DNA of 64,000 nucleotides from Pseudomonas aeruginosa PAO1 (GTDB lineage Bacteria > Pseudomonadota > Gammaproteobacteria > Pseudomonadales > Pseudomonadaceae): the NCBI RefSeq assembly GCF_000006765.1, contig NC_002516.2; one strand, given 5' to 3'. Position 1 is the first letter of the stretch, and each line of letters begins with the position of its first letter. The translations under genes were made by a program, and so were the position numbers. The notes under the pieces are model-generated. The model was not told the DNA's origin. It did not search any database and saw only the letters and a program-made list of their open reading frames with translations. This document shows, piece after piece, positions 1-9,703 of this stretch.

Positions 1-83
1 GACGGAGCTCCGGACGAAGATACTGGCATTCTAGCTGCGCCCGACATGTCCAGGCACGACGGCGATCACGCTGCGCCCTTTTC

Positions 84-108
84 AAAAATGCAAATCTTTC
101 GCATTATG
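84..108. promoter_or_regulatory. Fur-box-like operator upstream of icmP
   Basis: AAAAATGCAAATCTTTCGCATTATG. About 12/19 match to GATAATGATAATCATTATC on each strand (overlapping boxes). AT-rich imperfect palindrome AATGC..GCATT. Confidence 0.65.
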
Positions 109-192
109 TGGCGGTTTTTTAACGCCCTCGCGGGTGTTTCCGACAAGCGCACGCCGCTTCGGCACGCCACCAATAAAGCAAAGGAATCCGCC

Positions 193-1533
193 ATGACTCG
201 TATGCCCCTGGCCACCGCCAGTCTGCTGGCCCTCGCCATCTCCCTCGCCGGCTGCGGCGACGACAAGAAAGCCGAAGCGCCCGCAACACCGGCGGCCAGC
301 ACGCAGCCCGCCGCGCCCGCCGCCGCCCCGGCCGCCAAGGTCGACGAGGCCGCCGCCAAGGCGGTGATCAAGAATTACGCGGACCTCGCCGAAGCCACCT
401 TCGCCGATGCCCTGAGCACCGCCAAGGACCTGCAGAAAGCCATCGACGCGTTCCTCGCCAAGCCTGACGCGGAGACCCTGAAAGCCGCCAAGGAAGCCTG
501 GTTCGCCGCTCGTACCCCTTACTCCCAGAGCGAAGCCTTCCGCTTCGGCAACGCGATCATCGACGACTGGGAAGGACAGGTTAACGCCTGGCCGCTGGAC
601 GAAGGCCTGATCGACTATGTCGCCAAGGACTACCAGCACGCCCTGGGCAACCCCGGCGCCACCGCCAACATCGTCGCCAACACCGAGATCCAGGTCGGCG
701 AAGACAAGATCGACGTCAAGGAAATCACCGGCGAGAAACTGGCCAGCCTGAACGAGCTGGGCGGTTCCGAAGCCAACGTCGCCACCGGCTACCACGCCAT
801 CGAGTTCCTCCTCTGGGGCCAAGACCTGAACGGCACCGGTCCCGGCGCCGGCAACCGTCCCGCCACCGACTATGCCCAGGGCAAGGACTGCACCGGCGGC
901 CATTGCGACCGTCGTGCCGCCTACCTGAAGGCCGTCACCGACCTGCTGGTCAGCGACCTCGAATACATGGCCGGACAGTGGAAAGCCGGCGTCGCCGACA
1001 ACTACCGCGCCAAGCTGGAGGCCGAACCGGTGGATACCGGCCTGCGCAAGATGTTCTTCGGCATGGGCAGCCTGTCCCTCGGCGAACTGGCCGGCGAGCG
1101 CATGAAGGTCGCGCTGGAGGCCAACTCCACCGAAGACGAGCACGACTGCTTCAGCGACGACACCCACCACACCCTGTTCTTCAACGGCAAGAGCATCCGC
1201 AACATCTACCTCGGCGAGTACAAGCGCATCGACGGCAGCGTGGTCAAGGGCCCGAGCCTGGCCGACCTGGTCGCCAAGGCCGACGCCGCCGCCAACGACA
1301 CCCTGAAGGCCGACCTGGCCGACACCGAGGCCAAGCTGCAGGCCATCGTCGACAGCGCCGAGAAGGATGGCGTGCACTTCGACCAGATGATCGCTCCGGA
1401 CAACAAGGACGGCCAGCAGAAGATCCGCGACGCCATCGCCGCCCTGGTCAAGCAGACCGGCGCCATCGAGCAGGCCGCTGGCAAGCTGGGTATCCAGGAC
1501 CTGAAGCCGGACAACGCCGACCACGAGTTCTGA
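193..1533 (+). CDS. icmP: Imelysin-family outer-membrane lipoprotein (insulin-cleaving metalloproteinase IcmP), 446 aa
   Basis: SD AAGGA at 181-185. Lipobox LAGC, Ala/Pro-rich tether, imelysin GYHAIE (GxHxxE) motif at 787-804. Confidence 0.92.
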   Translation: MTRMPLATASLLALAISLAGCGDDKKAEAPATPAASTQPAAPAAAPAAKVDEAAAKAVIKNYADLAEATFADALSTAKDLQKAIDAFLAKPDAETLKAAKEAWFAARTPYSQSEAFRFGNAIIDDWEGQVNAWPLDEGLIDYVAKDYQHALGNPGATANIVANTEIQVGEDKIDVKEITGEKLASLNELGGSEANVATGYHAIEFLLWGQDLNGTGPGAGNRPATDYAQGKDCTGGHCDRRAAYLKAVTDLLVSDLEYMAGQWKAGVADNYRAKLEAEPVDTGLRKMFFGMGSLSLGELAGERMKVALEANSTEDEHDCFSDDTHHTLFFNGKSIRNIYLGEYKRIDGSVVKGPSLADLVAKADAAANDTLKADLADTEAKLQAIVDSAEKDGVHFDQMIAPDNKDGQQKIRDAIAALVKQTGAIEQAAGKLGIQDLKPDNADHEF

Positions 1534-1549
1534 TTCCTTCCTGTGCCAA

Positions 1550-1576
1550 CAGCGTGCGGCCCATGGCCGCACGCTG
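1550..1576 (+). terminator. Perfect 12-bp hairpin after icmP (terminator or mRNA-stabilising stem)
   Basis: CAGCGTGCGGCC-CAT-GGCCGCACGCTG followed only by CGTTTC (weak U tract). Confidence 0.55.
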
Positions 1577-1617
1577 CGTTTCAGGGCCTCGAAAGCGGTC
1601 TTCGCGGGCCTTTACAA

Positions 1618-1638
1618 ACGCAAATCCCTCTTATTTTG
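1618..1638. promoter_or_regulatory. Second Fur-like AT-rich site upstream of the di-heme gene
   Basis: Minus strand reads AAAATAAGAGGGATTTGCGTT, resembling AATGAGAATCATTTGC-type Fur sites. Confidence 0.4.
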
Positions 1639-1695
1639 ATTAGCCCCAACTGGTAAGCTTGCGGGCTGTTTCCACGCAGTCCGGGATGTTCGCCG

Positions 1696-3117
1696 ATGTC
1701 GTTGCCGTCACCTTCCATGCCGCTCGCCTGTCTCCTGACGGCGCTCCTTCTGGGCGGATGCGGCGCCGACGACGAACCGCTGCGCGCCGAGCCCGGCGAA
1801 CACCTGTCCGGGGGCGCGACCACGGTGCTGCAAAGCGACCGCAACGCCTTCTCCCTGCCCTCCGCCAACCTCGCCCCGAGCCGGCGCCTGGACTTCAGCG
1901 TGGGCAACAGTTTCTTCCGCAACCCCTGGGTCATCGCCCCTTCCTCCACCACCGCGCGCGACGGTCTGGGACCGCTGTTCAATACCAACGCCTGCCAGAA
2001 CTGCCATGTGAAGGACGGCCGCGGCCACCCGCCGGGAGCGGACGCGGTCAGCGCGGTGTCGATGCTGGTACGCCTGTCGATCCCGGCCGGCCCTGCGGAC
2101 GGCAAGACCCTGTTGCACCAGGGGGTGATTCCCGAGCCGACCTACGGCGGCCAGTTGCAGGACGTCGGCATTCCCGGCGTCGCCCCGGAAGGCAAGGTGC
2201 GGGTGGACTACGAGCCGCTGAAGGTGAGGTTCGAGGACGGCACCGAGGTCGAACTGCGCAAGCCGATCCTGCGTATCAGCCAGCTCGGCTATGGGCCGAT
2301 GCATCCGCAGACGATGTTTTCCGCCCGCGTCGCCCCGCCGATGATCGGGCTCGGCCTGCTCGAGGCGATTCCCGAAGAGGCGATCCTGGCCAATGCCGAT
2401 CCGGACGACCGAAACGGCGACGGTATCCGCGGGCGCGCCAACCAGGTCTGGGATGCCGCGCGGCAGCGCACCGCGCTCGGCCGCTTCGGCTGGAAGGCCG
2501 GCCAGCCGAATATCCCGCAGCAGAACGCGCACGCCTTCGCCAACGACATGGGCCTGACCAGCAGCCTGCTGCCCCACGACGACTGCAGCGCCGCCCAGGT
2601 CGAGTGCCGCCGGGCGCCCGACGGCGGCGAGCCGGAAGTCAGCGACAACATCTTCGCCCAGGTGCTGTTCTACAGCCGCAACCTGGCGGTCCCGGCGCGG
2701 CGCAAGGTGGACGACCCGCAGGTGCTGGCCGGCAAGCGCCTGTTCGCCCAGGCCAACTGCGTGGCCTGCCACGTTCCCGCCTTCACTACCGGTTCCGACG
2801 CCAGCGAGCCGGAGCTGGCCAACCAGCGGATTCGTCCCTATTCCGACCTGTTGCTGCATGACATGGGCGACGGCTTGGCGGACAATCGCCCGGAATTTCT
2901 CGCCAGCGGGCGGGACTGGCGAACCCCGCCGCTATGGGGCATCGGCCTGACCGAAACGGTCAACGGCCACACCCAGTTCCTCCACGACGGGCGCGCCCGC
3001 AATCTGCTGGAGGCGATCCTCTGGCACGGCGGCGAAGCCGAAGCGGCCAAGCGGCACGTGCTCGGCTTCGACGCCGACCAGCGCAGCGCCCTGCTGGCCT
3101 TCCTGAATTCACTCTGA
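1696..3117 (+). CDS. Di-heme oxidoreductase (DHOR-like) c-type cytochrome lipoprotein
   Basis: Lipobox LGGC. Two CxxCH motifs: CQNCH (1993-2007) and CVACH (2758-2772). Also LLHDMG, WRTPPLWG and LHDGRA motifs. Alternative start at 1717. Confidence 0.88.
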   Translation: MSLPSPSMPLACLLTALLLGGCGADDEPLRAEPGEHLSGGATTVLQSDRNAFSLPSANLAPSRRLDFSVGNSFFRNPWVIAPSSTTARDGLGPLFNTNACQNCHVKDGRGHPPGADAVSAVSMLVRLSIPAGPADGKTLLHQGVIPEPTYGGQLQDVGIPGVAPEGKVRVDYEPLKVRFEDGTEVELRKPILRISQLGYGPMHPQTMFSARVAPPMIGLGLLEAIPEEAILANADPDDRNGDGIRGRANQVWDAARQRTALGRFGWKAGQPNIPQQNAHAFANDMGLTSSLLPHDDCSAAQVECRRAPDGGEPEVSDNIFAQVLFYSRNLAVPARRKVDDPQVLAGKRLFAQANCVACHVPAFTTGSDASEPELANQRIRPYSDLLLHDMGDGLADNRPEFLASGRDWRTPPLWGIGLTETVNGHTQFLHDGRARNLLEAILWHGGEAEAAKRHVLGFDADQRSALLAFLNSL

Positions 3118-3126
3118 GGAGCCCAC

Positions 3127-4191
3127 ATGTTCCGCCCACGACTGCTCTTGACCAGCCTCGCCATCGCCCTCGGCGCCTGCTCGCCGCAAGACCCGCAGGC
3201 CGTCACCAGTGCCGCCCTGGCGCAACAGGTGATCCTGCCGACCTACAGCCGCTGGGTGGAGGCCGACCAGGCCCTGGCCAGCAGCGCCCTGGCCTACTGC
3301 CAGGGCAAGGAAGACCTGGCCAAGGCCCGCGACGCGTTCCACGCCGCGCAGAAGGCCTGGGCCGAGCTGCAACCGCTGCTGATCGGCCCGCTGGCCGAGG
3401 GCAACCGCGCCTGGCAGGTGCAGTTCTGGCCGGACAAGAAGGACCTGGTCGGGCGCCAGGTCGAACAGTTGCTGAAGAACAACCCGCAGGTCGACGCCGC
3501 GGCCCTGGCCAAGGCCAGCGTGGTGGTGCAGGGGCTCTCCGCCTACGAATACATCCTCTTCGACAGCAAGATCGACCTCGCCGACGCCGCCACCAAGGCC
3601 CGCTATTGCCCGTTGCTGGAAGCCATCGGCACCCACCAGCAGCAACTGGCCCAGGACATCCTGGCGCGCTGGAAGAACGACGGCGGCATGCTCACCCAGA
3701 TGAGCAAGTTCCCCAACGACCGCTACGCCGACGCCCACGAGGCGATCGCCGAGCTGCTGCGGGTCCAGGTCACCGCCCTGGACATGCTGAAGAAGAAACT
3801 CGGTACTCCGCTGGGCCGGCAGAGCAAGGGCATTCCCCAGCCCTACCAGGCCGAGGCCTGGCGCAGCAACGCCTCGCTGGCCAGCCTGGACGCCAGCCTG
3901 AGCGGCGCCCAGGCGCTCTGGGAAGGTATCGACGGCAAGGGCCTGAAGACCCTGCTGCCGGCCGAACAGAAGGACCTGGCCGGCAAGATCGACGCCGCCT
4001 ACGCCGACAGCCACGCGAAGCTGGCGGCGCTGGAACAGAAACCGCTCTCCGAACTGCTCGCCAGCGAAGACGGGCGCAACCAGCTCAACGCCCTCTATGA
4101 CAGCCTGAACGTGGTCCACCGCCTGCACGAAGGCGATCTGGCCCGCGCCCTCGGCGTGCAACTGGGCTTCAACGCCAACGATGGCGACTGA
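3127..4191 (+). CDS. Imelysin-family lipoprotein, second paralogue, 354 aa
   Basis: Lipobox LGAC, FWPD motif, GLSAYE variant of the imelysin motif, C-terminal GFNANDGD. SD GAGGA. Confidence 0.85.
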   Translation: MFRPRLLLTSLAIALGACSPQDPQAVTSAALAQQVILPTYSRWVEADQALASSALAYCQGKEDLAKARDAFHAAQKAWAELQPLLIGPLAEGNRAWQVQFWPDKKDLVGRQVEQLLKNNPQVDAAALAKASVVVQGLSAYEYILFDSKIDLADAATKARYCPLLEAIGTHQQQLAQDILARWKNDGGMLTQMSKFPNDRYADAHEAIAELLRVQVTALDMLKKKLGTPLGRQSKGIPQPYQAEAWRSNASLASLDASLSGAQALWEGIDGKGLKTLLPAEQKDLAGKIDAAYADSHAKLAALEQKPLSELLASEDGRNQLNALYDSLNVVHRLHEGDLARALGVQLGFNANDGD

Positions 4192-4201
4192 GGTCGGCAC
4201 C

Positions 4202-5296
4202 ATGCTGCGACGTCATGTGATCGGCCTGGGCAGCCTGCTGCTCGGCGCCTTGTCCTTCGGCGGCTGGAGCTTCAGCCGCCTGGGTAGCCAACCGCTGGTG
4301 CTATCGGCGCGCGACGACGCCGATGGCCAGCATTACGCGGTGGGCTACCGCCTGGACGGCAAGTGCCAGTTCGCCACCCGCGTGGCCCAGCGCTGCCACG
4401 ACATCGTCCAGCACCCGAGCCTGCCGCTGGCGCTGTTCGTCGCCCGCCGGCCAGGCACCGAAAGCTACCTGATCGACCTGAACGACGGTCGCCTGCTGCA
4501 GACCCTGGTCTCGCAGAAAGACCGCCACTTCTACGGCCACGGCGTGTTCCACCAGAGCGGCGAGTGGCTCTACGCCACCGAGAACGACACTACCGATCCC
4601 GGTCGCGGCGTGCTCGGCGTCTACCGTTTCGACGGCGAGCGACTGCAGCACAGCGGCGAGATCTCCACCCACGGCCTCGGGCCGCACCAGGTTTCCTGGA
4701 TGCCCGACGGCGAGACACTGGTAGTGGCCAACGGCGGCATTCGCACCGAGGCGGAAAGCCGGGTCGAGATGAACCTCGACGCCATGGAGCCCAGCCTGGT
4801 GCTGATGCGCCGCGACGGCAACCTGCTGTCCAAGGAAACCCTGGCGCAGCAGATGAACAGCGTCCGCCACCTGGCGATCGGTCGCGACGGCACCATCGTC
4901 GCCGGCCAGCAGTTCATGGGCGATGCCCACGAACATGCCGACCTGCTGGCGATCAAGCGCCCCGGCCGTCCCTTCGAAGCCTTCCCTGTGGCCGAGGAGC
5001 AGCGCCTGGCGATGGCCCAGTACACCGCCAGCGTGGCGATCCACGACGACCTGCGCCTGGTGGCCCTGACCGCCCCGCGCGGCAACCGTTTCTTCATCTG
5101 GGACCTGGACAGCGGTGCCGTACGCCTCGACGCGCCGTTGCCGGACTGCGCCGGCGTGGGCGCGGTGAAGAACGGCTTCGTCGTCACGTCCGGACAGGGC
5201 CGTTGCCGCTTCTACGACTGCCAGGGCGAGCGCATCGCCGCGCAACCGCTGGAGCTGCCTTCCGGCCTCTGGGACAACCACCTGCACCTGGCCTGA
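4202..5296 (+). CDS. DUF1513-like beta-propeller protein, probably Tat-exported
   Basis: SD GAGGT at 4190. MLRRHVIG twin-Arg signal. FYGHG, GPHQV and ANGGI.T motifs, C-terminal WDNH. Confidence 0.82.
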   Translation: MLRRHVIGLGSLLLGALSFGGWSFSRLGSQPLVLSARDDADGQHYAVGYRLDGKCQFATRVAQRCHDIVQHPSLPLALFVARRPGTESYLIDLNDGRLLQTLVSQKDRHFYGHGVFHQSGEWLYATENDTTDPGRGVLGVYRFDGERLQHSGEISTHGLGPHQVSWMPDGETLVVANGGIRTEAESRVEMNLDAMEPSLVLMRRDGNLLSKETLAQQMNSVRHLAIGRDGTIVAGQQFMGDAHEHADLLAIKRPGRPFEAFPVAEEQRLAMAQYTASVAIHDDLRLVALTAPRGNRFFIWDLDSGAVRLDAPLPDCAGVGAVKNGFVVTSGQGRCRFYDCQGERIAAQPLELPSGLWDNHLHLA

Positions 5297-5384
5297 GAGC
5301 ACGGCATCAACCTCTCGCCATACCGGTCCGCGAAAGTCGGAAGCGACCTGCAACACGCTTGAAATCTTTCGCCAATCCTGTGCT

Positions 5385-5414
5385 TTGACAAGCCCTGAAA
5401 GCTGCACGTAATGT
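5385..5414 (+). promoter_or_regulatory. Candidate sigma70 promoter for mexVW
   Basis: TTGACA (5385-5390)-N18-TAATGT (5409-5414). Confidence 0.5.
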
Positions 5415-5465
5415 GTCGGATTCGCCCCGAAACGGGGCGCTCTCGGCATACCAGGGACCAGGATT

Positions 5466-6596
5466 ATGTTGCTCCGCCGCATGTTGATCATGCTCGCCGC
5501 GGTGATCGCCGTGGTGGCGATTCTCGCCGGCTACAAGGTCTACTCCATCCGTCAGCAGATCGCCCTTTTCAGCGCACCGAAACCGCCGATCAGCGTGACC
5601 GCCAGCCTGGCCGAAAAGCGTCCCTGGCAGAGCCGCCTGCCAGCCATCGGCAGCCTCAAGGCATTCCAGGGCGTGACCCTCACCGCCGAAGTCTCCGGCA
5701 CGGTACGCGACGTACTGTTCCTTTCCGGCGACCAGGTGAAGCTGGACCAACCGCTGATCCAGTTGGAAAGCGACGTCGAGGAAGCCACCCTGCGCACTGC
5801 CGAGGCCGATCTCGGCCTGGCCAGGGCCGAGTACCAGCGCGGCCGCGAACTGATCGGCAGCAAGGCCATCTCGAAAAGCGAATTCGATCGTCTCGCCGCG
5901 CAGTGGGCCAAGACCAGCGCCACCGTCGCCGAGCTGAAGGCGGCGCTGGCGAAGAAGCGCGTGCTCGCGCCCTTCGCCGGGACCATCGGCATCCGCCAGG
6001 TGGACGTCGGCGACTACGTCTCGCCCGGGACGCCGATCGCCACCTTGCAGGACCTTTCCACCCTGCTCCTGGATTTCCACCTGCCCGAGCAGGACTTCCC
6101 CCTGCTCAGCCGCGGCCAACTGGTGAAGGTCCGGGTCGCCGCCTACCCCGCCCAGGTGTTCGACGCCGAGATCGCCGCCATCAACCCCAAGGTCGACAAC
6201 GAGACCCGCAACCTGCAGGTCCGCGCTGCCCTGGAGAACCCGGACGGCAAGCTGCTGCCGGGCATGTTCGCCAACCTCGAGGTGATGTTGCCTGGCGAGG
6301 AACAACGCGTCGTGGTCCCGGAGACGGCGATCACCTTCACCCTCTACGGCGACTCGATCTACGTCGTCGGGCAGAAGAAGGACGAGCAGGGCCAGGTGTC
6401 GAAGGATGACAAGGGCCAGCCGCAACAGGTCGTCGAGCGCCGCTTCGTCAGGATCGGCGAACGCCGCGAAGGCCTGGCGGTGGTGCTCGAAGGCCTTGAG
6501 GGCGGCGAGCAGGTAGTGACTTCCGGGCAACTGAAGCTCGACAACGGCGCCGCGGTGGCCATCGTCGCCGAGCGGGACCTCCAGCAAGAGCACTGA
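5466..6596 (+). CDS. mexV: RND efflux membrane fusion protein
   Basis: N-terminal membrane anchor, lipoyl/hairpin MFP architecture (APFAGTIG, LLPGMF), directly upstream of an RND transporter. Confidence 0.92.
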   Translation: MLLRRMLIMLAAVIAVVAILAGYKVYSIRQQIALFSAPKPPISVTASLAEKRPWQSRLPAIGSLKAFQGVTLTAEVSGTVRDVLFLSGDQVKLDQPLIQLESDVEEATLRTAEADLGLARAEYQRGRELIGSKAISKSEFDRLAAQWAKTSATVAELKAALAKKRVLAPFAGTIGIRQVDVGDYVSPGTPIATLQDLSTLLLDFHLPEQDFPLLSRGQLVKVRVAAYPAQVFDAEIAAINPKVDNETRNLQVRAALENPDGKLLPGMFANLEVMLPGEEQRVVVPETAITFTLYGDSIYVVGQKKDEQGQVSKDDKGQPQQVVERRFVRIGERREGLAVVLEGLEGGEQVVTSGQLKLDNGAAVAIVAERDLQQEH

Positions 6597-6646
6597 GTCG
6601 CGCGCCTTCCCGCTCCGTGGCGGAAGGCTTGCCAAGGGACTGAAAC

Positions 6647-9600
6647 ATGGCTTTTACCGATCCGTTCATCCGTCGTCCGGTCCTGGCGAGCGTGGTCAGC
6701 CTGCTGATCGTCCTGCTCGGCATGCAGGCCTTCAGCAAGCTGGTGATCCGCGAGTATCCGCAAATGGAGAACGCGCTGATCACGGTGACCACGCTCTACG
6801 CCGGCGCCAACGCGGAAACCATCCAGGGCTACATCACCCAGCCGCTGCAGCAGAGCCTGGCCAGCGCCGAAGGCATCGACTACATGACCTCGGTGAGCCG
6901 GCAGAACTATTCGACCATCTCCATCTACGCGCGGATCGGCGCCAATACCGATCGCCTGGTCACCGAGCTGCTGGCCAAGTCCAACGAAGTGAAGAGCCAG
7001 CTGCCGCCGGACGCCGAGGACCCGGTGCTGCAGAAGGAGGCCGCGGACGCCTCGGCGCTGATGTACATCAGCTTCTACAGCGAGCAGATGAACAACCCGC
7101 AGATCACCGACTACCTGTCGCGGGTGATCCAGCCCAAGCTGGCGACCCTGCCCGGTATCGCCGAGGCGGAGATCCTCGGCAACCAGGTGTTCGCCATGCG
7201 CCTGTGGCTGGACCCGGTGAAGATGGCCGCGTTCGGCGTCACCGCCGGCGAGATCAACCAGGCGGTGCAGCAGTACAACTTCCTCGCCGCCGCCGGCGAG
7301 GTGAAGGGCCAGTTGGTGGTCACCAGCGTCAATGCTTCCACCGACCTCAAGTCGCCCCAGGCCTTCGCCGCCATCCCGGTGAAGACCGACGGCGACCGCC
7401 GGGTGCTGATGGGTGATGTCGCACGGGTCGAACTGGGCGCCGCCAGCTACGACGCGATCAGTTCGTTCAATGGGATTCCCTCGGTCTACATCGGCATCAA
7501 GGGCACGCCCAGCGCCAACCCGCTGGACGTGATCAAGGAAGTGCGGGCGAAGATGCCCGAACTGGAAGAGCAATTGCCGCCCAACCTCAAGGTGTCCATC
7601 GCCTACGACGCCACGCGCTTCATTCAGGCCTCCATCGATGAAGTGGTGAAGACCCTCGGCGAGGCGGTGCTGATCGTCATCGTGGTGGTGTTCCTGTTCC
7701 TCGGCGCGTTCCGTTCGGTACTGATCCCGGTGGTGACCATTCCGCTGTCGATGATCGGCGTATTGTTCTTCATGCAGGCCATGGGCTACTCGATCAACCT
7801 GCTGACCCTGCTGGCGATGGTCCTGGCCATCGGCCTGGTGGTGGACGACGCGATCGTGGTGGTGGAAAACATCCACCGCCACATCGAGGAGGGCAAGCCG
7901 CCCTTCGAGGCTGCCCTGGAGGGCGCGCGGGAGATCGCCGTACCGGTGGTCAGCATGACCATCACCCTCGCCGCGGTCTACGCGCCGATCGGCTTCCTCA
8001 CCGGCCTCACCGGCGCCCTGTTCAAGGAGTTCGCCTTCACCCTGGCCGGCGCGGTGATCATTTCCGGGATCGTCGCCCTGACCCTGTCGCCGATGATGTG
8101 CTCGCGCCTGTTGCGCCACGAGGAGAATCCCTCGGGCCTGGCGCATCGCCTCGACCTGATCTTCGAGGGCCTGAAGCAACGCTACCAGCGCGCCCTCCAC
8201 GGCACCCTGGACACCCGTCCGGTGGTCCTGGTGTTCGCCGTGCTGGTACTGGCGCTGATCCCGGTACTGCTGATGTTCACCAAGAAGGAGCTGGCGCCGG
8301 AAGAGGACCAGGGCATCGTGTTCCTCATGACCAACTCGCCGCAAACCGCCAACCTCGACTACCTGAATCGCTACACCGCCGAGTTCGAAGGCATCTTCCG
8401 CAGCTTCCCGGAGTATTACTCGGCGTTCCAGATCAACGGCTACAACGGCGTCCAGGCCGGCATCGGCGGCATGCTGCTCAAGCCCTGGGACGAACGCGAA
8501 AAGAGCCAGATGGAATTGCTCCATGCGGTGCAGGCGAAGCTCAACGAGATTCCCGGCGTGCAGATCTTCGCCTTCAACCTGCCGTCGCTACCGGGCACCG
8601 GCGAGGGCCTGCCATTCCAGTTCGTGCTCAACACCGCCAACGACTACGAGTCGCTGCTGCAAGTGGCGCAACGGGTGAAGCAGCGCGCCAGCGAGTCCGG
8701 CAAGTTCGCCTTCCTCGATCTCGACCTGGCGTTCGACAAACCCGAGCTGGTGGTCGACATCGACCGCGAGAAGGCCGCGCAGATGGGCGTCTCCATGCAG
8801 GACCTGGGGGTGGCGCTGGCCAGCCTGCTCGGCGAGGGCGAGATCAACCGCTTCACCATCGACGGGCGCAGCTACAAGGTCATCGCCCAGGTCGAACGCC
8901 CCTATCGCGACAATCCCGGCTGGCTCGGCAGCTACTACGTGAAGAGCCGCAACGGCCAACTGGTCGCCCTCTCGACCCTGATCGAGACCCACGAACGGGC
9001 ACGGCCACGGCAACTGAACCAGTTCCAGCAGCTCAACTCGGCGATCATCTCCGGCTTCCCCATCGTCAGCATGGGCGAGGCCATCGAGACGGTTCAGCAG
9101 ATCGCCCGCGAGGAAGCCCCGCGTGGCTTCGCCGTCGACTACGCCGGCGCTTCCCGGCAATACGTGCAGGAAGGCAGCGCATTGCTGGTCACCTTCGGAC
9201 TGGCCCTGGCGATCATCTTCCTGGTCCTCGCCGCACAGTTCGAAAGCTTCCGCGATCCGCTGGTGATCATGGTCACCGTGCCGCTGTCGATCTGCGGTGC
9301 GCTGATACCGCTGTTCCTCGGCGTGTCGAGCCTGAACATCTATACCCAGGTCGGCCTGGTGACCCTGATCGGCCTGATCAGCAAACACGGCATCCTGATC
9401 GTCGAGTTCGCCAACCAGTTGCGCCACGAACAGGGGCTGGGGCGTCGCGAGGCCATCGAGCAGGCCGCCGCGATCCGCCTGCGGCCAGTACTGATGACCA
9501 CCGCGGCGATGGTGCTCGGGGTGATCCCGCTGATCCTCGCCACCGGCGCCGGGGCGGTCAGTCGCTTCGACATCGGCATCGTGATCGCGACCGGCATGTC

Positions 9601-9703
9601 GGTGGGCACCCTCTTCACCCTGTTCGTCCTGCCGTGCATCTACACCCTGGTGGCCAGGCCGGATGCCCCGCCAGGCGTGACGCAAGCGGCAAACGCACAC
9701 TGA
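6647..9703 (+). CDS. mexW: RND efflux inner-membrane transporter, 1018 aa
   Basis: [12 protein letters not shown] start, [13 protein letters not shown] proton-relay motif, [21 protein letters not shown]. Confidence 0.93.

What the first reader, a model, noticed from the sequence alone, without database searches (positions are those of the whole stretch)
193..5296. Imelysin / di-heme cytochrome / imelysin / DUF1513 cluster: a self-contained envelope metal-redox system with no transporter
Seen: four co-directional, tightly spaced genes. The first three carry lipoboxes (LAGC, LGGC, LGAC) and the fourth a twin-Arg signal. There are two CxxCH motifs, Fur-like boxes, and no permease or TonB receptor. 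Established: imelysins with GxHxxE are linked to iron uptake (EfeO/IrpA type). In the bCcP/MauG/MbnH di-heme superfamily, some members oxidatively modify a Trp in a partner protein. Inference: the di-heme lipoprotein either oxidises Fe(II) for capture by the imelysins, or modifies them. Both imelysins keep a Trp-Pro motif before the metal motif (NAWPLD, QFWPD). I know of no mechanistic description of this four-part system.
Basis: partly seen in the sequence, partly recalled or inferred. Interest (0 to 1): 0.72.

Follow-up and report, generated by a model that had tools for sequence, protein, structure and literature searches.

The report
Iron-regulated imelysin, di-haem cytochrome operon
This is the already described iron-repressed icmP-PA4373 operon of Pseudomonas aeruginosa: a widely conserved set of four periplasmic proteins (two imelysins, a two-haem cytochrome, a propeller protein) whose chemistry is unsolved and which most likely oxidises and captures iron.

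Summary
Four intact, co-directional genes lie at 193-5296: imelysin IcmP, a DHOR (ex-DUF1111) di-haem cytochrome c, a GxxxxE imelysin-like protein and DUF1513. Lipoboxes, two CxxCH motifs and a twin-arginine leader are all present. IcmP matches PDB 7XRX at 100%, so this is P. aeruginosa PA4370-PA4373.

The cluster is not new. Xu et al. 2011 described it as a Fur-regulated imelysin operon. Price et al. 2016 described the conserved four-gene operon with cofitness.

What I add:
- DHOR, the second imelysin and DUF1513 are contiguous in 80/80 Pseudomonas loci and 10/10 distant loci. The first imelysin is separable.
- DUF1513 models confidently as a Tat-exported seven-bladed propeller. Its invariant histidines sit on the innermost strands, which suggests a metal or cofactor centre, not an outer-membrane component.
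- Lipid anchors are lineage-specific.
- "No transporter" is true in Pseudomonas. Elsewhere the module sits beside ExbBD-TonB, an LbtU-type siderophore porin, Feo, bacterioferritin/Bfd, multicopper oxidases or MbnH/MauG-like enzymes.
- The di-haem protein is not a CCP_MauG family member by sequence.
- The Trp-Pro motif is an imelysin family feature, and it is Tyr-Pro in the solved homologue 3PF0.

Most likely function: periplasmic Fe(II) oxidation and Fe(III) capture. The Trp-modification idea is unsupported.

The parts
79..108 (+). Promoter with Fur-like operator. It has a -35-like TTTTCA (79-84), the palindrome AATGCAAATCTTTCGCATT (87-105) and a -10-like CATTAT (102-107).
   Evidence: Two overlapping 12/19 matches to the Fur consensus. 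It is the only conserved block upstream of g1 in 10 Pseudomonas species. The same motif lies about 80 nt (-76 to -107) upstream of g1 in the Pseudomonas loci where that region could be read. Fur regulation is reported in PMC3143127.
193..1533 (+). g1, icmP (PA4370): canonical imelysin lipoprotein. It has lipobox LAGC, a Pro/Ala-rich tether at residues 22-48, the GYHAIE (GxHxxE) motif and an acidic EDEHDCFSDDTH cluster.
   Evidence: Peptidase_M75, 3e-89. 100% identical to PDB 7XRX over residues 49-446. Invariant residues are listed in alignment A5.
1550..1576 (+). Strong stem-loop just after the g1 stop (12-bp stem, 3-nt loop, no T-run). Possibly an mRNA-stabilising or attenuating element.
   Evidence: Folding energy -34.4 kcal/mol, z = -4.1, and 0 of 200 shuffles fold as well.
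1611..1661 (+). Second conserved upstream block, CAAACGCAAATCCCTCTTATT ... CTGGTAAGCTTG. It is a likely internal iron-regulated promoter for g2-g4.
   Evidence: Conserved in 15 Pseudomonas sequences, including species in which g1 is not adjacent. Fur-consensus match is 10-12/19.
1696..3117 (+). g2 (PA4371): DHOR-family di-haem c-type cytochrome lipoprotein. Haem motifs are CQNCH (nt 1993-2007) and CVACH (nt 2758-2772). Invariant residues include C297/C304, H388-D389, H430, H444, W408, W414 and W443; M390 is nearly invariant.
   Evidence: PF06537, 2.9e-102. Invariant columns are in A3/A4. There is no CCP_MauG match.
3127..4191 (+). g3 (PA4372): imelysin-like lipoprotein of the IPPA family. It has GLSAYE (GxxxxE, no His), an FWPD motif and an invariant C-terminal GFNxxDGD.
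   Evidence: Peptidase_M75, 3.8e-62. Matches PDB 3PF0 at 2.6e-17. Alignment A6.
4202..5296 (+). g4 (PA4373): DUF1513, a Tat-exported seven-bladed beta-propeller. Invariant residues are H66, H113, H162, H223 and H360 (H109 nearly invariant), together with R64, R82 and D358.
   Evidence: PF07433, 9.6e-115. Invariant columns come from 121 sequences. The AlphaFold2 model has pLDDT 92.4 and pTM 0.89. Foldseek finds only generic propellers. The start at 4202 follows from homologue length and the RBS.

Best explanation
This is the Fur-repressed icmP-PA4371-PA4372-PA4373 operon of P. aeruginosa. It is one copy of a widespread periplasmic iron redox and capture module.

Shown:
- Two EfeO/EfeM-type imelysin proteins are present. 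One has the full GxHxxE and acidic site; the other has a degenerate site.
- A Sec-exported di-haem c cytochrome (DHOR) is present.
- A Tat-exported seven-bladed propeller (DUF1513) is present.
- These genes are co-inherited, tightly coupled and preceded by conserved Fur-like operators.

Inferred:
- The module works like EfeOB without its own permease.
- DHOR takes electrons from periplasmic Fe(II) and passes them to peroxide or another oxidant. It may act together with a metal or cofactor centre in the DUF1513 propeller.
- The Fe(III) formed is held on the imelysin acidic site.
- That iron is then handed to separately encoded routes. These differ between lineages and include TonB-energised or LbtU-type outer-membrane channels, Feo, SBP/ABC systems and bacterioferritin.
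- The second imelysin and DUF1513 are obligatory partners of DHOR. IcmP is a separable front-end.
For: Identity:
- Pfam matches for all four proteins.
- 100% identity to PDB 7XRX, IcmP.
- Xu et al. 2011 name PA4370-PA4373 a Fur-regulated imelysin operon.
- Price et al. describe the conserved EfeO-like/DUF1111/EfeO-like/DUF1513 operon with cofitness.

Linkage:
- g2-g3-g4 are contiguous in 80/80 Pseudomonas loci.
- They are also contiguous in 10/10 distant loci, where DUF1513 is 32-38% identical to the window and 34-61% identical among the loci.
- The intergenic gaps are 9-10 nt with ribosome-binding sites.

Iron link:
- The operator-like palindrome between -35 and -10 is conserved. A second conserved block lies upstream of g2.
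- Stronger Fur-consensus matches (14-15/19) lie upstream of three distant clusters, L085, L087 and L088.
- Recurrent neighbours in the 10 distant loci: bacterioferritin/Bfd 4/10, hemP 2/10, ExbBD-TonB 2/10, LbtU-family siderophore porin 2/10, Feo 1/10.
- The Leptospira imelysin/cytochrome/imelysin operon is induced by low iron and by H2O2.

Direction of redox:
- Extra oxidases are encoded directly after DUF1513: a multicopper oxidase in 2/10 loci and a CCP_MauG enzyme in 3/10.
- M75 domains bind Fe, Cu and Zn at conserved acidic and HxxE sites, and the EfeB-EfeO precedent supports oxidation followed by capture.

DUF1513:
- The model is confident.
- The twin-arginine leader is conserved.
- Invariant His residues lie at or near the start of the innermost strand of blades 1-5.
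Against: - No activity, metal content or protein-protein contact was tested here or reported in the papers I could read.
- The direction of electron flow is inferred from neighbours only.
- The DHOR structure prediction failed (pLDDT 40), so nothing can be said about a substrate site.
- PIBO did not bind zinc, and zinc destabilised IPPA, in thermofluor assays.
- Published mutant phenotypes (chlorite, various metals) are not iron-specific, and Price et al. say ferrous iron is not certain.
- A separate report gives IcmP a role as receptor for T6SS-secreted ModA in molybdate uptake.
- The central clustering of the His residues is deduced from strand register, not from coordinates.
Confidence: 0.45

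Rival explanations
1. Reductive version. DHOR draws electrons from the periplasmic cytochrome pool. It reduces Fe(III) held by imelysins, siderophores or host ligands, and the Fe(II) released enters through Feo or other ferrous importers.
For: feoABC lies divergently next to the cluster in L087. c-type di-haem proteins can act in either direction. The module is iron-starvation regulated. There is no dedicated Fe(III) permease in the cluster.
Against: The recurrent add-on enzymes are oxidases or peroxidases that consume electrons (multicopper oxidase, CCP_MauG). The EfeOB precedent is oxidative. The Leptospira operon is induced by H2O2.
Confidence: 0.15
2. Envelope peroxide and metal-stress defence. 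DHOR acts as a periplasmic peroxidase, and the imelysins and DUF1513 buffer or donate metal. Iron regulation would then reflect iron sparing rather than uptake.
For: Pfam calls DHOR a putative peroxidase. The Leptospira operon is up-regulated by H2O2. Mutants are sensitive to chlorite and metals. sodB, a Cu-SOD gene and CCP genes occur nearby.
Against: The conserved Fur-type control and the iron storage and uptake neighbours fit acquisition better. Two metal-binding imelysins are unnecessary for simple peroxide removal.
Confidence: 0.12
3. The di-haem protein is a MauG/MbnH-like maturase that oxidises the conserved Trp of the imelysins, or a residue of DUF1513, to create the functional metal site.
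For: W-P is invariant in 11/11 g1 and 11/11 g3 sequences compared. Genuine MbnH/MauG-like genes follow DUF1513 in 3/10 distant loci (best NCBIfam hit TIGR04039 at 2e-47, below its cut-off). DUF1513 resembles the propeller subunits of amine dehydrogenases, but only generically.
Against: g2 is not a CCP_MauG family member. WPLD is also present in the Bacteroidales imelysin-family structures 3N8U and 4ECG, so it is a family feature rather than specific to this operon; I had no EfeO/EfeM sequence to check. The solved g3-family protein 3PF0 has Tyr-Pro. The MbnH-like gene is absent from Pseudomonas. No modified residue is mentioned in what I read of the imelysin structure papers.
Confidence: 0.06
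4. IcmP is mainly the outer-membrane receptor for T6SS-secreted ModA in molybdate acquisition. The operon would then serve oxyanion uptake rather than iron uptake.
For: This is reported for P. aeruginosa (Wang et al. 2021, as cited in PMC8602904 and PMC9769707). DUF1513 has many invariant Arg and His residues that could bind an anion.
Against: I could not read the primary paper. g1 is a lipoprotein in only 3/11 lineages and otherwise soluble periplasmic. All conserved neighbours and operators point to iron. g1 is the most separable gene of the four.
Confidence: 0.05
5. IcmP is a zinc metalloprotease (the original 'insulin-cleaving membrane protease'), and the cluster processes envelope proteins.
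For: This is the historical assignment, with MEROPS family M75 and an HxxE motif.
Against: Crystal structures show an all-helical fold with no peptidase-like site. Zinc did not bind PIBO and destabilised IPPA in thermofluor assays. Xu et al. attribute the activity to contamination.
Confidence: 0.02

Closest known systems
[quoted passage not shown] 2011, PMC3143127) and the 'EfeO-like, DUF1111, EfeO-like, DUF1513' operon of Price et al. (bioRxiv 10.1101/072470)
   Same: It is the same locus and the same four families. Fur control, conservation and cofitness are already reported.
   Different: Nothing differs in content. My analysis disagrees with two published remarks. First, DUF1111/DHOR is not an EfeB (DyP) homologue. 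Second, DUF1513 is a Tat-exported soluble propeller, not an outer-membrane component.
EfeUOB / EfeUOB-M ferrous iron transporter
   Same: It pairs an M75 imelysin-type metal-binding protein with an exported haem peroxidase. It is iron-regulated. The model of Fe(II) oxidation followed by Fe(III) hand-over is the working analogy.
   Different: There is no EfeU (FTR1) permease and no cupredoxin domain. The haem enzyme is a Sec-exported di-haem c cytochrome, not a Tat-exported DyP. There is an extra GxxxxE imelysin and an extra Tat propeller.
MauG/MADH and MbnH/MbnP di-haem maturases
   Same: They have two c-type haems and act in the periplasm. A propeller partner exists in the MADH/AADH case. MbnH-like genes sit next to the module in some lineages (L085, L087, L088).
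   Different: g2 does not match the CCP_MauG family. It has about 255 residues between its haem motifs, against about 173 in the MbnH-like proteins compared here. No substrate with a known modified Trp is present.
Leptospira LruB operon (LIMLP_14170-14180)
   Same: It has an imelysin, cytochrome-c-domain 'thiol peroxidase', imelysin order and is induced by low iron.
   Different: It is also peroxide-induced. Whether DUF1513 is present there was not checked. It is known mainly as a uveitis antigen.
Redox enzymes that pair a c-type cytochrome with a beta-propeller carrying the active centre (cd1 nitrite reductase, quinohaemoprotein amine dehydrogenase, hydrazine synthase, NosZ, carotenoid oxygenases for the His-ring)
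   Same: They have a seven- or eight-bladed propeller with conserved His on the inner strands. Some are Tat-exported and some have a cytochrome partner.
   Different: The fold similarity is only generic (TM about 0.6, 9-16% identity). No cofactor has been identified for DUF1513.

Membership tests
Imelysin / Peptidase_M75 superfamily (g1, ICMP family) | Pfam PF09375 match above the gathering score | tested here: met
   299.8 bits against a cut-off of 23.5. 100% identical to PDB 7XRX, IcmP.
Imelysin / Peptidase_M75 superfamily (g1, ICMP family) | GxHxxE motif plus conserved acidic site residues | tested here: met
   GYHAIE at residues 199-204. E114, D124, E127, E137, D141, E314, E316, H317, D322 and H325 are invariant in 8 diverse sequences.
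IPPA-type imelysin-like family (g3) | PF09375 match, with GxxxxE in place of GxHxxE | tested here: met
   210.9 bits. GLSAYE motif. Matches PDB 3PF0 (IPPA) at 2.6e-17 over the full length.
DHOR / DUF1111 di-haem oxidoreductase (g2) | PF06537 full-length match and two CxxCH motifs | tested here: met
   343.2 bits, covering profile positions 6-499 of 499. CxxCH at residues 100 and 355, invariant in 20 sequences.
bCcP / MauG / MbnH (CCP_MauG, PF03150) | Sequence membership of PF03150 | tested here: not met
   No PF03150 hit at E<=10. hhalign against three MbnH/MauG-like proteins gives probability 3.4% over 37 columns. bCcP chains 3O5C and 1EB7 are found only at E 1.5-1.9.
bCcP / MauG / MbnH (CCP_MauG, PF03150) | Two-domain fold with a Trp between the haems, a Ca2+ site, and a Met or Tyr distal ligand | tested here: inconclusive
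   The AlphaFold2 model of g2 was unusable (pLDDT 40). No DHOR structure is in the PDB. Candidate residues (M390, H388, W408, W414, W443) are conserved but unplaced.
EfeUOB | FTR1-type permease EfeU in the operon | tested here: not met
   None in window 1-9700. None upstream in close relatives. None in the 10 distant loci.
EfeUOB | DyP-type peroxidase EfeB and a cupredoxin domain on EfeO | tested here: not met
   g2 matches only DHOR and cytochrome c families. g1 and g3 carry only the M75 domain.
DUF1513 (g4) | PF07433 full-length match | tested here: met
   383.2 bits, covering profile positions 2-303 of 304.
Tat substrates (g4) | Twin-arginine motif in an N-terminal signal peptide | tested here: met
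   MLRRHVIG in the window and (S/T)RRxFL in homologues. RR is present in 11/11 loci and at least 90% conserved in 121 sequences. Export itself was not tested.
Fur regulon | Fur box overlapping the promoter, and iron-dependent repression | tested here: inconclusive
   The score is only 12/19 (about 10% of random 320-nt windows reach this). The element is nevertheless conserved in sequence and position. Repression is reported in the literature and was not tested here.

The most novel reading that the evidence does not exclude
DUF1513 is a new kind of Tat-exported metalloprotein. A ring of invariant histidines, one per blade, at the mouth of a seven-bladed propeller would hold a metal or tetrapyrrole centre. 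Together with the DHOR di-haem cytochrome it would form a two-protein periplasmic oxidoreductase. That enzyme would act on iron, or on the imelysins. If so, this is a permease-independent ferroxidase and capture system distinct from EfeUOB, Fet3/Ftr1-type and cupredoxin-based systems.
Probability: 0.25. Interest if true: 0.7.

Novelty: already known. Interest (0 to 1): 0.35.

Why it matters
The module is widespread. DUF1513 alone has about 1,900 clusters at 50% identity, and DHOR has many more. It is iron-regulated in pathogens and in environmental bacteria.

It has had no mechanism since it was first noted as Fur-regulated more than twenty years ago. It contains three families with no assigned chemistry.

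Solving it would explain how Gram-negative bacteria handle iron in the periplasm between outer-membrane entry and inner-membrane uptake or storage. It would also assign a function to the M75 'peptidase' family.

The present finding itself adds no new entity. Its value is as a pointer to an open, testable problem.

Tried and rejected
1. AlphaFold2 of g2 with a 20-sequence alignment gave pLDDT 40.
2. The third protein search, with a DHOR profile, returned almost only Pseudomonas sequences, so it did not deepen the alignment.
3. The genome-contig scan kept only the 80 best loci, all Pseudomonas-like. I obtained diversity from ten encoding-contig look-ups instead.
4. Searching the PDB by sequence for DHOR and DUF1513 relatives gave nothing specific. 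DUF1513 hits were only WD40-like repeats.
5. I looked for informative domain fusions of DUF1513. The long variants carry only an N-terminal membrane anchor.
6. I considered mexVW as the 'missing transporter' and rejected it. It has its own promoter (PMC9718400), is absent from all distant loci, and is missing downstream in 18/80 Pseudomonas loci.
7. I rejected the 'thiol oxidoreductase' annotation of g2. It appears to come from reading the CxxC of the haem motifs (source names).
8. The consensus promoter/terminator scan gave nothing above shuffled expectation.
9. Literature searches for a newer mechanistic paper found none.

Full report
What is there.

The region 193-5296 holds four intact ORFs on the + strand. 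Pfam places them as follows:
- g1, 193-1533: Peptidase_M75 (imelysin), 3e-89.
- g2, 1696-3117: DHOR PF06537 (the former DUF1111), 2.9e-102.
- g3, 3127-4191: Peptidase_M75, 3.8e-62.
- g4: DUF1513 PF07433, 9.6e-115.

[quoted passage not shown] The window is therefore Pseudomonas aeruginosa and the genes are icmP/PA4370 to PA4373. The next genes downstream are an RND adaptor and pump, which I take to be mexV-mexW on the strength of PMC9718400.

- Lipoboxes LAGC, LGGC and LGAC.
- Two CxxCH motifs, at g2 residues 100 and 355.
- An N-terminal MLRRHVIG on g4.
- NAWPLD in g1 and QFWPD in g3.

Three corrections apply:
- g4 most likely starts at 4202. A GAGG lies eight bases upstream and homologues are 364 aa long.
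- g3 has GLSAYE, i.e. GxxxxE without the histidine.
- The Fur-like boxes are weak by score, at 12/19.

Regulatory elements.

I aligned the region upstream of g1 from ten Pseudomonas species. The only conserved block besides the ribosome-binding site is TTTACA-N-AAAATGCAAATCTTTCGCATTATG. It contains the palindrome AATGC-N9-GCATT between a -35-like and a -10-like hexamer, at window 79-108. The same motif lies 76-107 nt upstream of g1 in the Pseudomonas loci where that region could be read.

A second conserved block, CAAACG(A/C)WAATYSCTCTTATT followed by CCTGWTARRCTT, lies upstream of g2 at window 1611-1661. It is kept in species where g1 is not adjacent, so g2-g4 probably have their own iron-responsive promoter.

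A 12-bp stem-loop follows the g1 stop codon (-34.4 kcal/mol, z -4.1).

By score alone these operators are not significant, since about 10% of random 320-nt windows reach 12/19. Their conservation, and the published Fur regulation (Xu et al. 2011), make them credible. Three distant clusters (L085, L087, L088) carry 14-15/19 matches upstream.

What is already known.
- Xu et al. [quoted passage not shown] They solved structures of both imelysin types. They argue that imelysins are not peptidases and note that they are almost always linked to a DUF1111 di-haem protein.
- Price et al. [quoted passage not shown] They report cofitness of its genes in several bacteria and phenotypes on chlorite and metals. 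They note bacterioferritin next to alpha-proteobacterial versions and call DUF1513 the outer-membrane component of a ferrous uptake system, while admitting that the substrate is uncertain.
- A separate line of work names IcmP as the receptor of T6SS-secreted ModA in molybdate uptake.
- The Leptospira imelysin (LruB), cytochrome-c-domain protein, imelysin operon is induced by H2O2 and by low iron.
- I found no paper giving a mechanism.

The cluster is therefore known. Only its chemistry is open.

Linkage.

In 80 Pseudomonas loci, g2-g3-g4 are contiguous in all 80. The position of g1 relative to g2 varies:
- within 600 nt upstream in 51 loci;
- 0.6-2 kb away in 10;
- more than 2 kb away in 7;
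- not within at least 7 kb in 11.

In L011 the spacer holds a large opposite-strand ORF. In L039 a two-component system lies upstream of g2.

I also read ten distant loci from genomes and metagenomes. Their DUF1513 is 32-38% identical to the window's and 34-61% identical to each other. All ten have DHOR, imelysin-like and DUF1513 contiguous. Nine have the canonical imelysin directly upstream in the same direction, and in the tenth it is divergent. The core is therefore three genes, with IcmP as a frequent but separable fourth.

Neighbours.

In Pseudomonas the flanks hold no importer. Upstream are a LysR regulator, LysE, sodB and a GGDEF-EAL gene. Downstream is mexVW, which has its own promoter.

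In the distant loci the module is adjacent to the following:
- ExbB/ExbD/ExbD/TonB, directly upstream and co-directional (L082, L084).
- A protein that passes the NCBIfam cut-off for LbtU-family siderophore porins (203 bits against 90; L086), and its homologue in L089.
- hemP (L085, L088).
- feoABC (L087).
- An SBP gene (L092).
- Bfd and/or bacterioferritin (L084, L087, L089, L091).
- A multicopper oxidase immediately after DUF1513 (L086, L090).
- A CCP_MauG di-haem enzyme immediately after DUF1513 (L085, L087, L088). Its best NCBIfam match is the MbnH family, below the cut-off.

All of these point to iron and to electron transfer to O2 or peroxide. They also show that 'no transporter' is a property of the Pseudomonas arrangement, not of the system.

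The proteins.

g1 keeps GxHxxE and a dense set of invariant acidic and His residues. These correspond to the sites that bind Cu, Fe or Zn in EfeM and Algp7.

g3 keeps few invariant residues. Among them are FWP(D/E/Q), the Glu of GxxxxE, two Cys and a C-terminal GFNxxDGD.

W-P is invariant in my sets. WPLD is also present in the Bacteroidales imelysin-family structures 3N8U and 4ECG. The solved g3-family protein 3PF0 has Tyr-Pro. The motif is a family feature beside the acidic site, not a mark of a modification target.

Lipoboxes are lineage-specific. They occur in g1 in 3/11 loci, in g2 in 1-2/11 and in g3 in 4/11; the rest have plain signal peptides. The conserved compartment is therefore the periplasm.

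g2 has two invariant haem motifs about 255 residues apart, an invariant Cys pair and several invariant His and Trp residues, plus a nearly invariant Met. It does not match CCP_MauG even at E<=10. It aligns with MbnH/MauG-like proteins only around the second haem motif, and it finds bacterial peroxidases in the PDB only at E above 1. Its predicted structure was unusable. Membership of the bCcP/MauG/MbnH family is thus not met by sequence and untested by fold.

DUF1513.

The family has about 1,945 clusters at 50% identity. In 121 diverse sequences the invariant residues are R64, H66, R82, P84, G112, H113, H162, G178, G179, H223, Q237, D358 and H360. H109, E127 and the twin arginines are nearly invariant.

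The AlphaFold2 model is confident (pLDDT 92.4, pTM 0.89) and is an all-beta seven-bladed propeller. Foldseek and profile searches find only generic propellers. These include YbhE, PpgL, amine dehydrogenase propeller subunits, hydrazine synthase beta and WD40 proteins, at TM about 0.6 and 9-16% identity.

I read the invariant residues against the strand order. H360, H66, H109, H162 and H223 fall at or near the start of the innermost strand of blades 1-5, and S277 and D315 do so in blades 6-7. That register puts them around the mouth of the central channel, as in propellers that hold a metal or tetrapyrrole on the axis. This is an inference from secondary-structure register, because I had no coordinates.

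Together with the conserved Tat leader it argues for a folded, possibly cofactor-bearing periplasmic protein. It argues against the 'outer membrane component' label.

Mechanism.

I commit to an EfeOB-like reading, at 0.45:
1. DHOR, perhaps with the DUF1513 centre, oxidises periplasmic Fe(II) at the expense of peroxide or another acceptor.
2. The imelysins hold the Fe(III).
3. The metal passes to transport or storage proteins encoded elsewhere.

Shown: the families, the linkage, the signals, the conserved operators and the iron and redox neighbours.

Inferred: every chemical step and its direction.

Rivals and my confidence in each:
- a reductive version feeding Feo, 0.15;
- an envelope peroxide or metal-stress role, 0.12;
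- a molybdate-receptor role for the operon, 0.05;
- the old protease assignment, 0.02.

Verdict.

The entity is already known. The open mechanism, and the likely metal centre in DUF1513, are the parts worth pursuing.

Noticed in passing
L011:2985-7268 (- strand); similar 4.5-6.5 kb spacers in L019, L026, L034, L046, L052, L066: In several P. fluorescens-group genomes g1 and g2 are separated by 4.5-6.5 kb. In L011 the spacer holds a 1427-aa opposite-strand ORF with a ToxA_N (dermonecrotic toxin N-terminal) domain. This shows the operon tolerates being split after icmP. I did not analyse that protein further.
   Followed up: partly
L086:4801-5934 (+) and L089:6111-7160 (-): A signal-peptide protein with an N-terminal coiled coil, a strand-rich body and a C-terminal Phe lies next to the canonical imelysin gene. 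The L086 copy passes the NCBIfam cut-off for LbtU-family siderophore porins (203 bits against 90). The two copies are 25% identical (E 9e-15). It is a candidate outer-membrane channel for the module.
   Followed up: partly
L085:11144-12304, L087:11135-12304, L088:11119-12294: A true CCP_MauG di-haem enzyme is encoded 6-15 nt after DUF1513 in three distant loci. Its best NCBIfam match is the MbnH family (2e-47, below the cut-off), followed by MauG. So some lineages carry two different di-haem proteins in one cluster.
   Followed up: partly
L086:11204-12595 and L090:11146-12528: A CopA/CueO-like multicopper oxidase gene follows DUF1513 directly and in the same direction in two distant loci. It occupies the same position as the CCP_MauG gene in other loci.
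   Followed up: no
L082:4091-5954 and L084:3228-5985: An exbB/exbD/exbD/tonB set ends 60-71 nt before the first imelysin gene and runs in the same direction, yet no TonB-dependent receptor gene is nearby.
   Followed up: no
window 1550-1576: A perfect 12-bp stem with a 3-nt loop lies 17 nt after the icmP stop codon, without a T-run (-34.4 kcal/mol, z -4.1). It could stabilise the icmP message or attenuate read-through into g2.
   Followed up: partly
window 256-336 (g1 residues 22-48): IcmP has a tether of about 27 residues, rich in Pro, Ala, Thr and Gln, between the lipidated Cys and the folded domain. The tether is absent from the crystallised construct (7XRX starts at residue 49). It is long enough to let an anchored protein reach well into the periplasm.
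   Followed up: no
window 5466-9703: The mexV-mexW RND pump genes follow g4 after 170 nt. This synteny is kept in 62 of 80 Pseudomonas loci but in none of the distant loci. Published work places a separate mexV promoter in the PA4373-mexV spacer.
   Followed up: partly
P0188, P0214 (DUF1513 homologues of 529 and 540 aa): These long DUF1513 variants lack the twin arginine. Instead they have an N-terminal extension of about 170 residues, low in complexity, with one hydrophobic helix. This suggests an inner-membrane-anchored version of the propeller.
   Followed up: partly
Source names for DHOR homologues: The same family is variously named 'thiol oxidoreductase', 'CxxC motif-containing protein', 'c-type cytochrome' and even 'photosystem II cytochrome PsbV2'. 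The thiol label seems to come from reading the haem CxxCH motif as CxxC.
   Followed up: no
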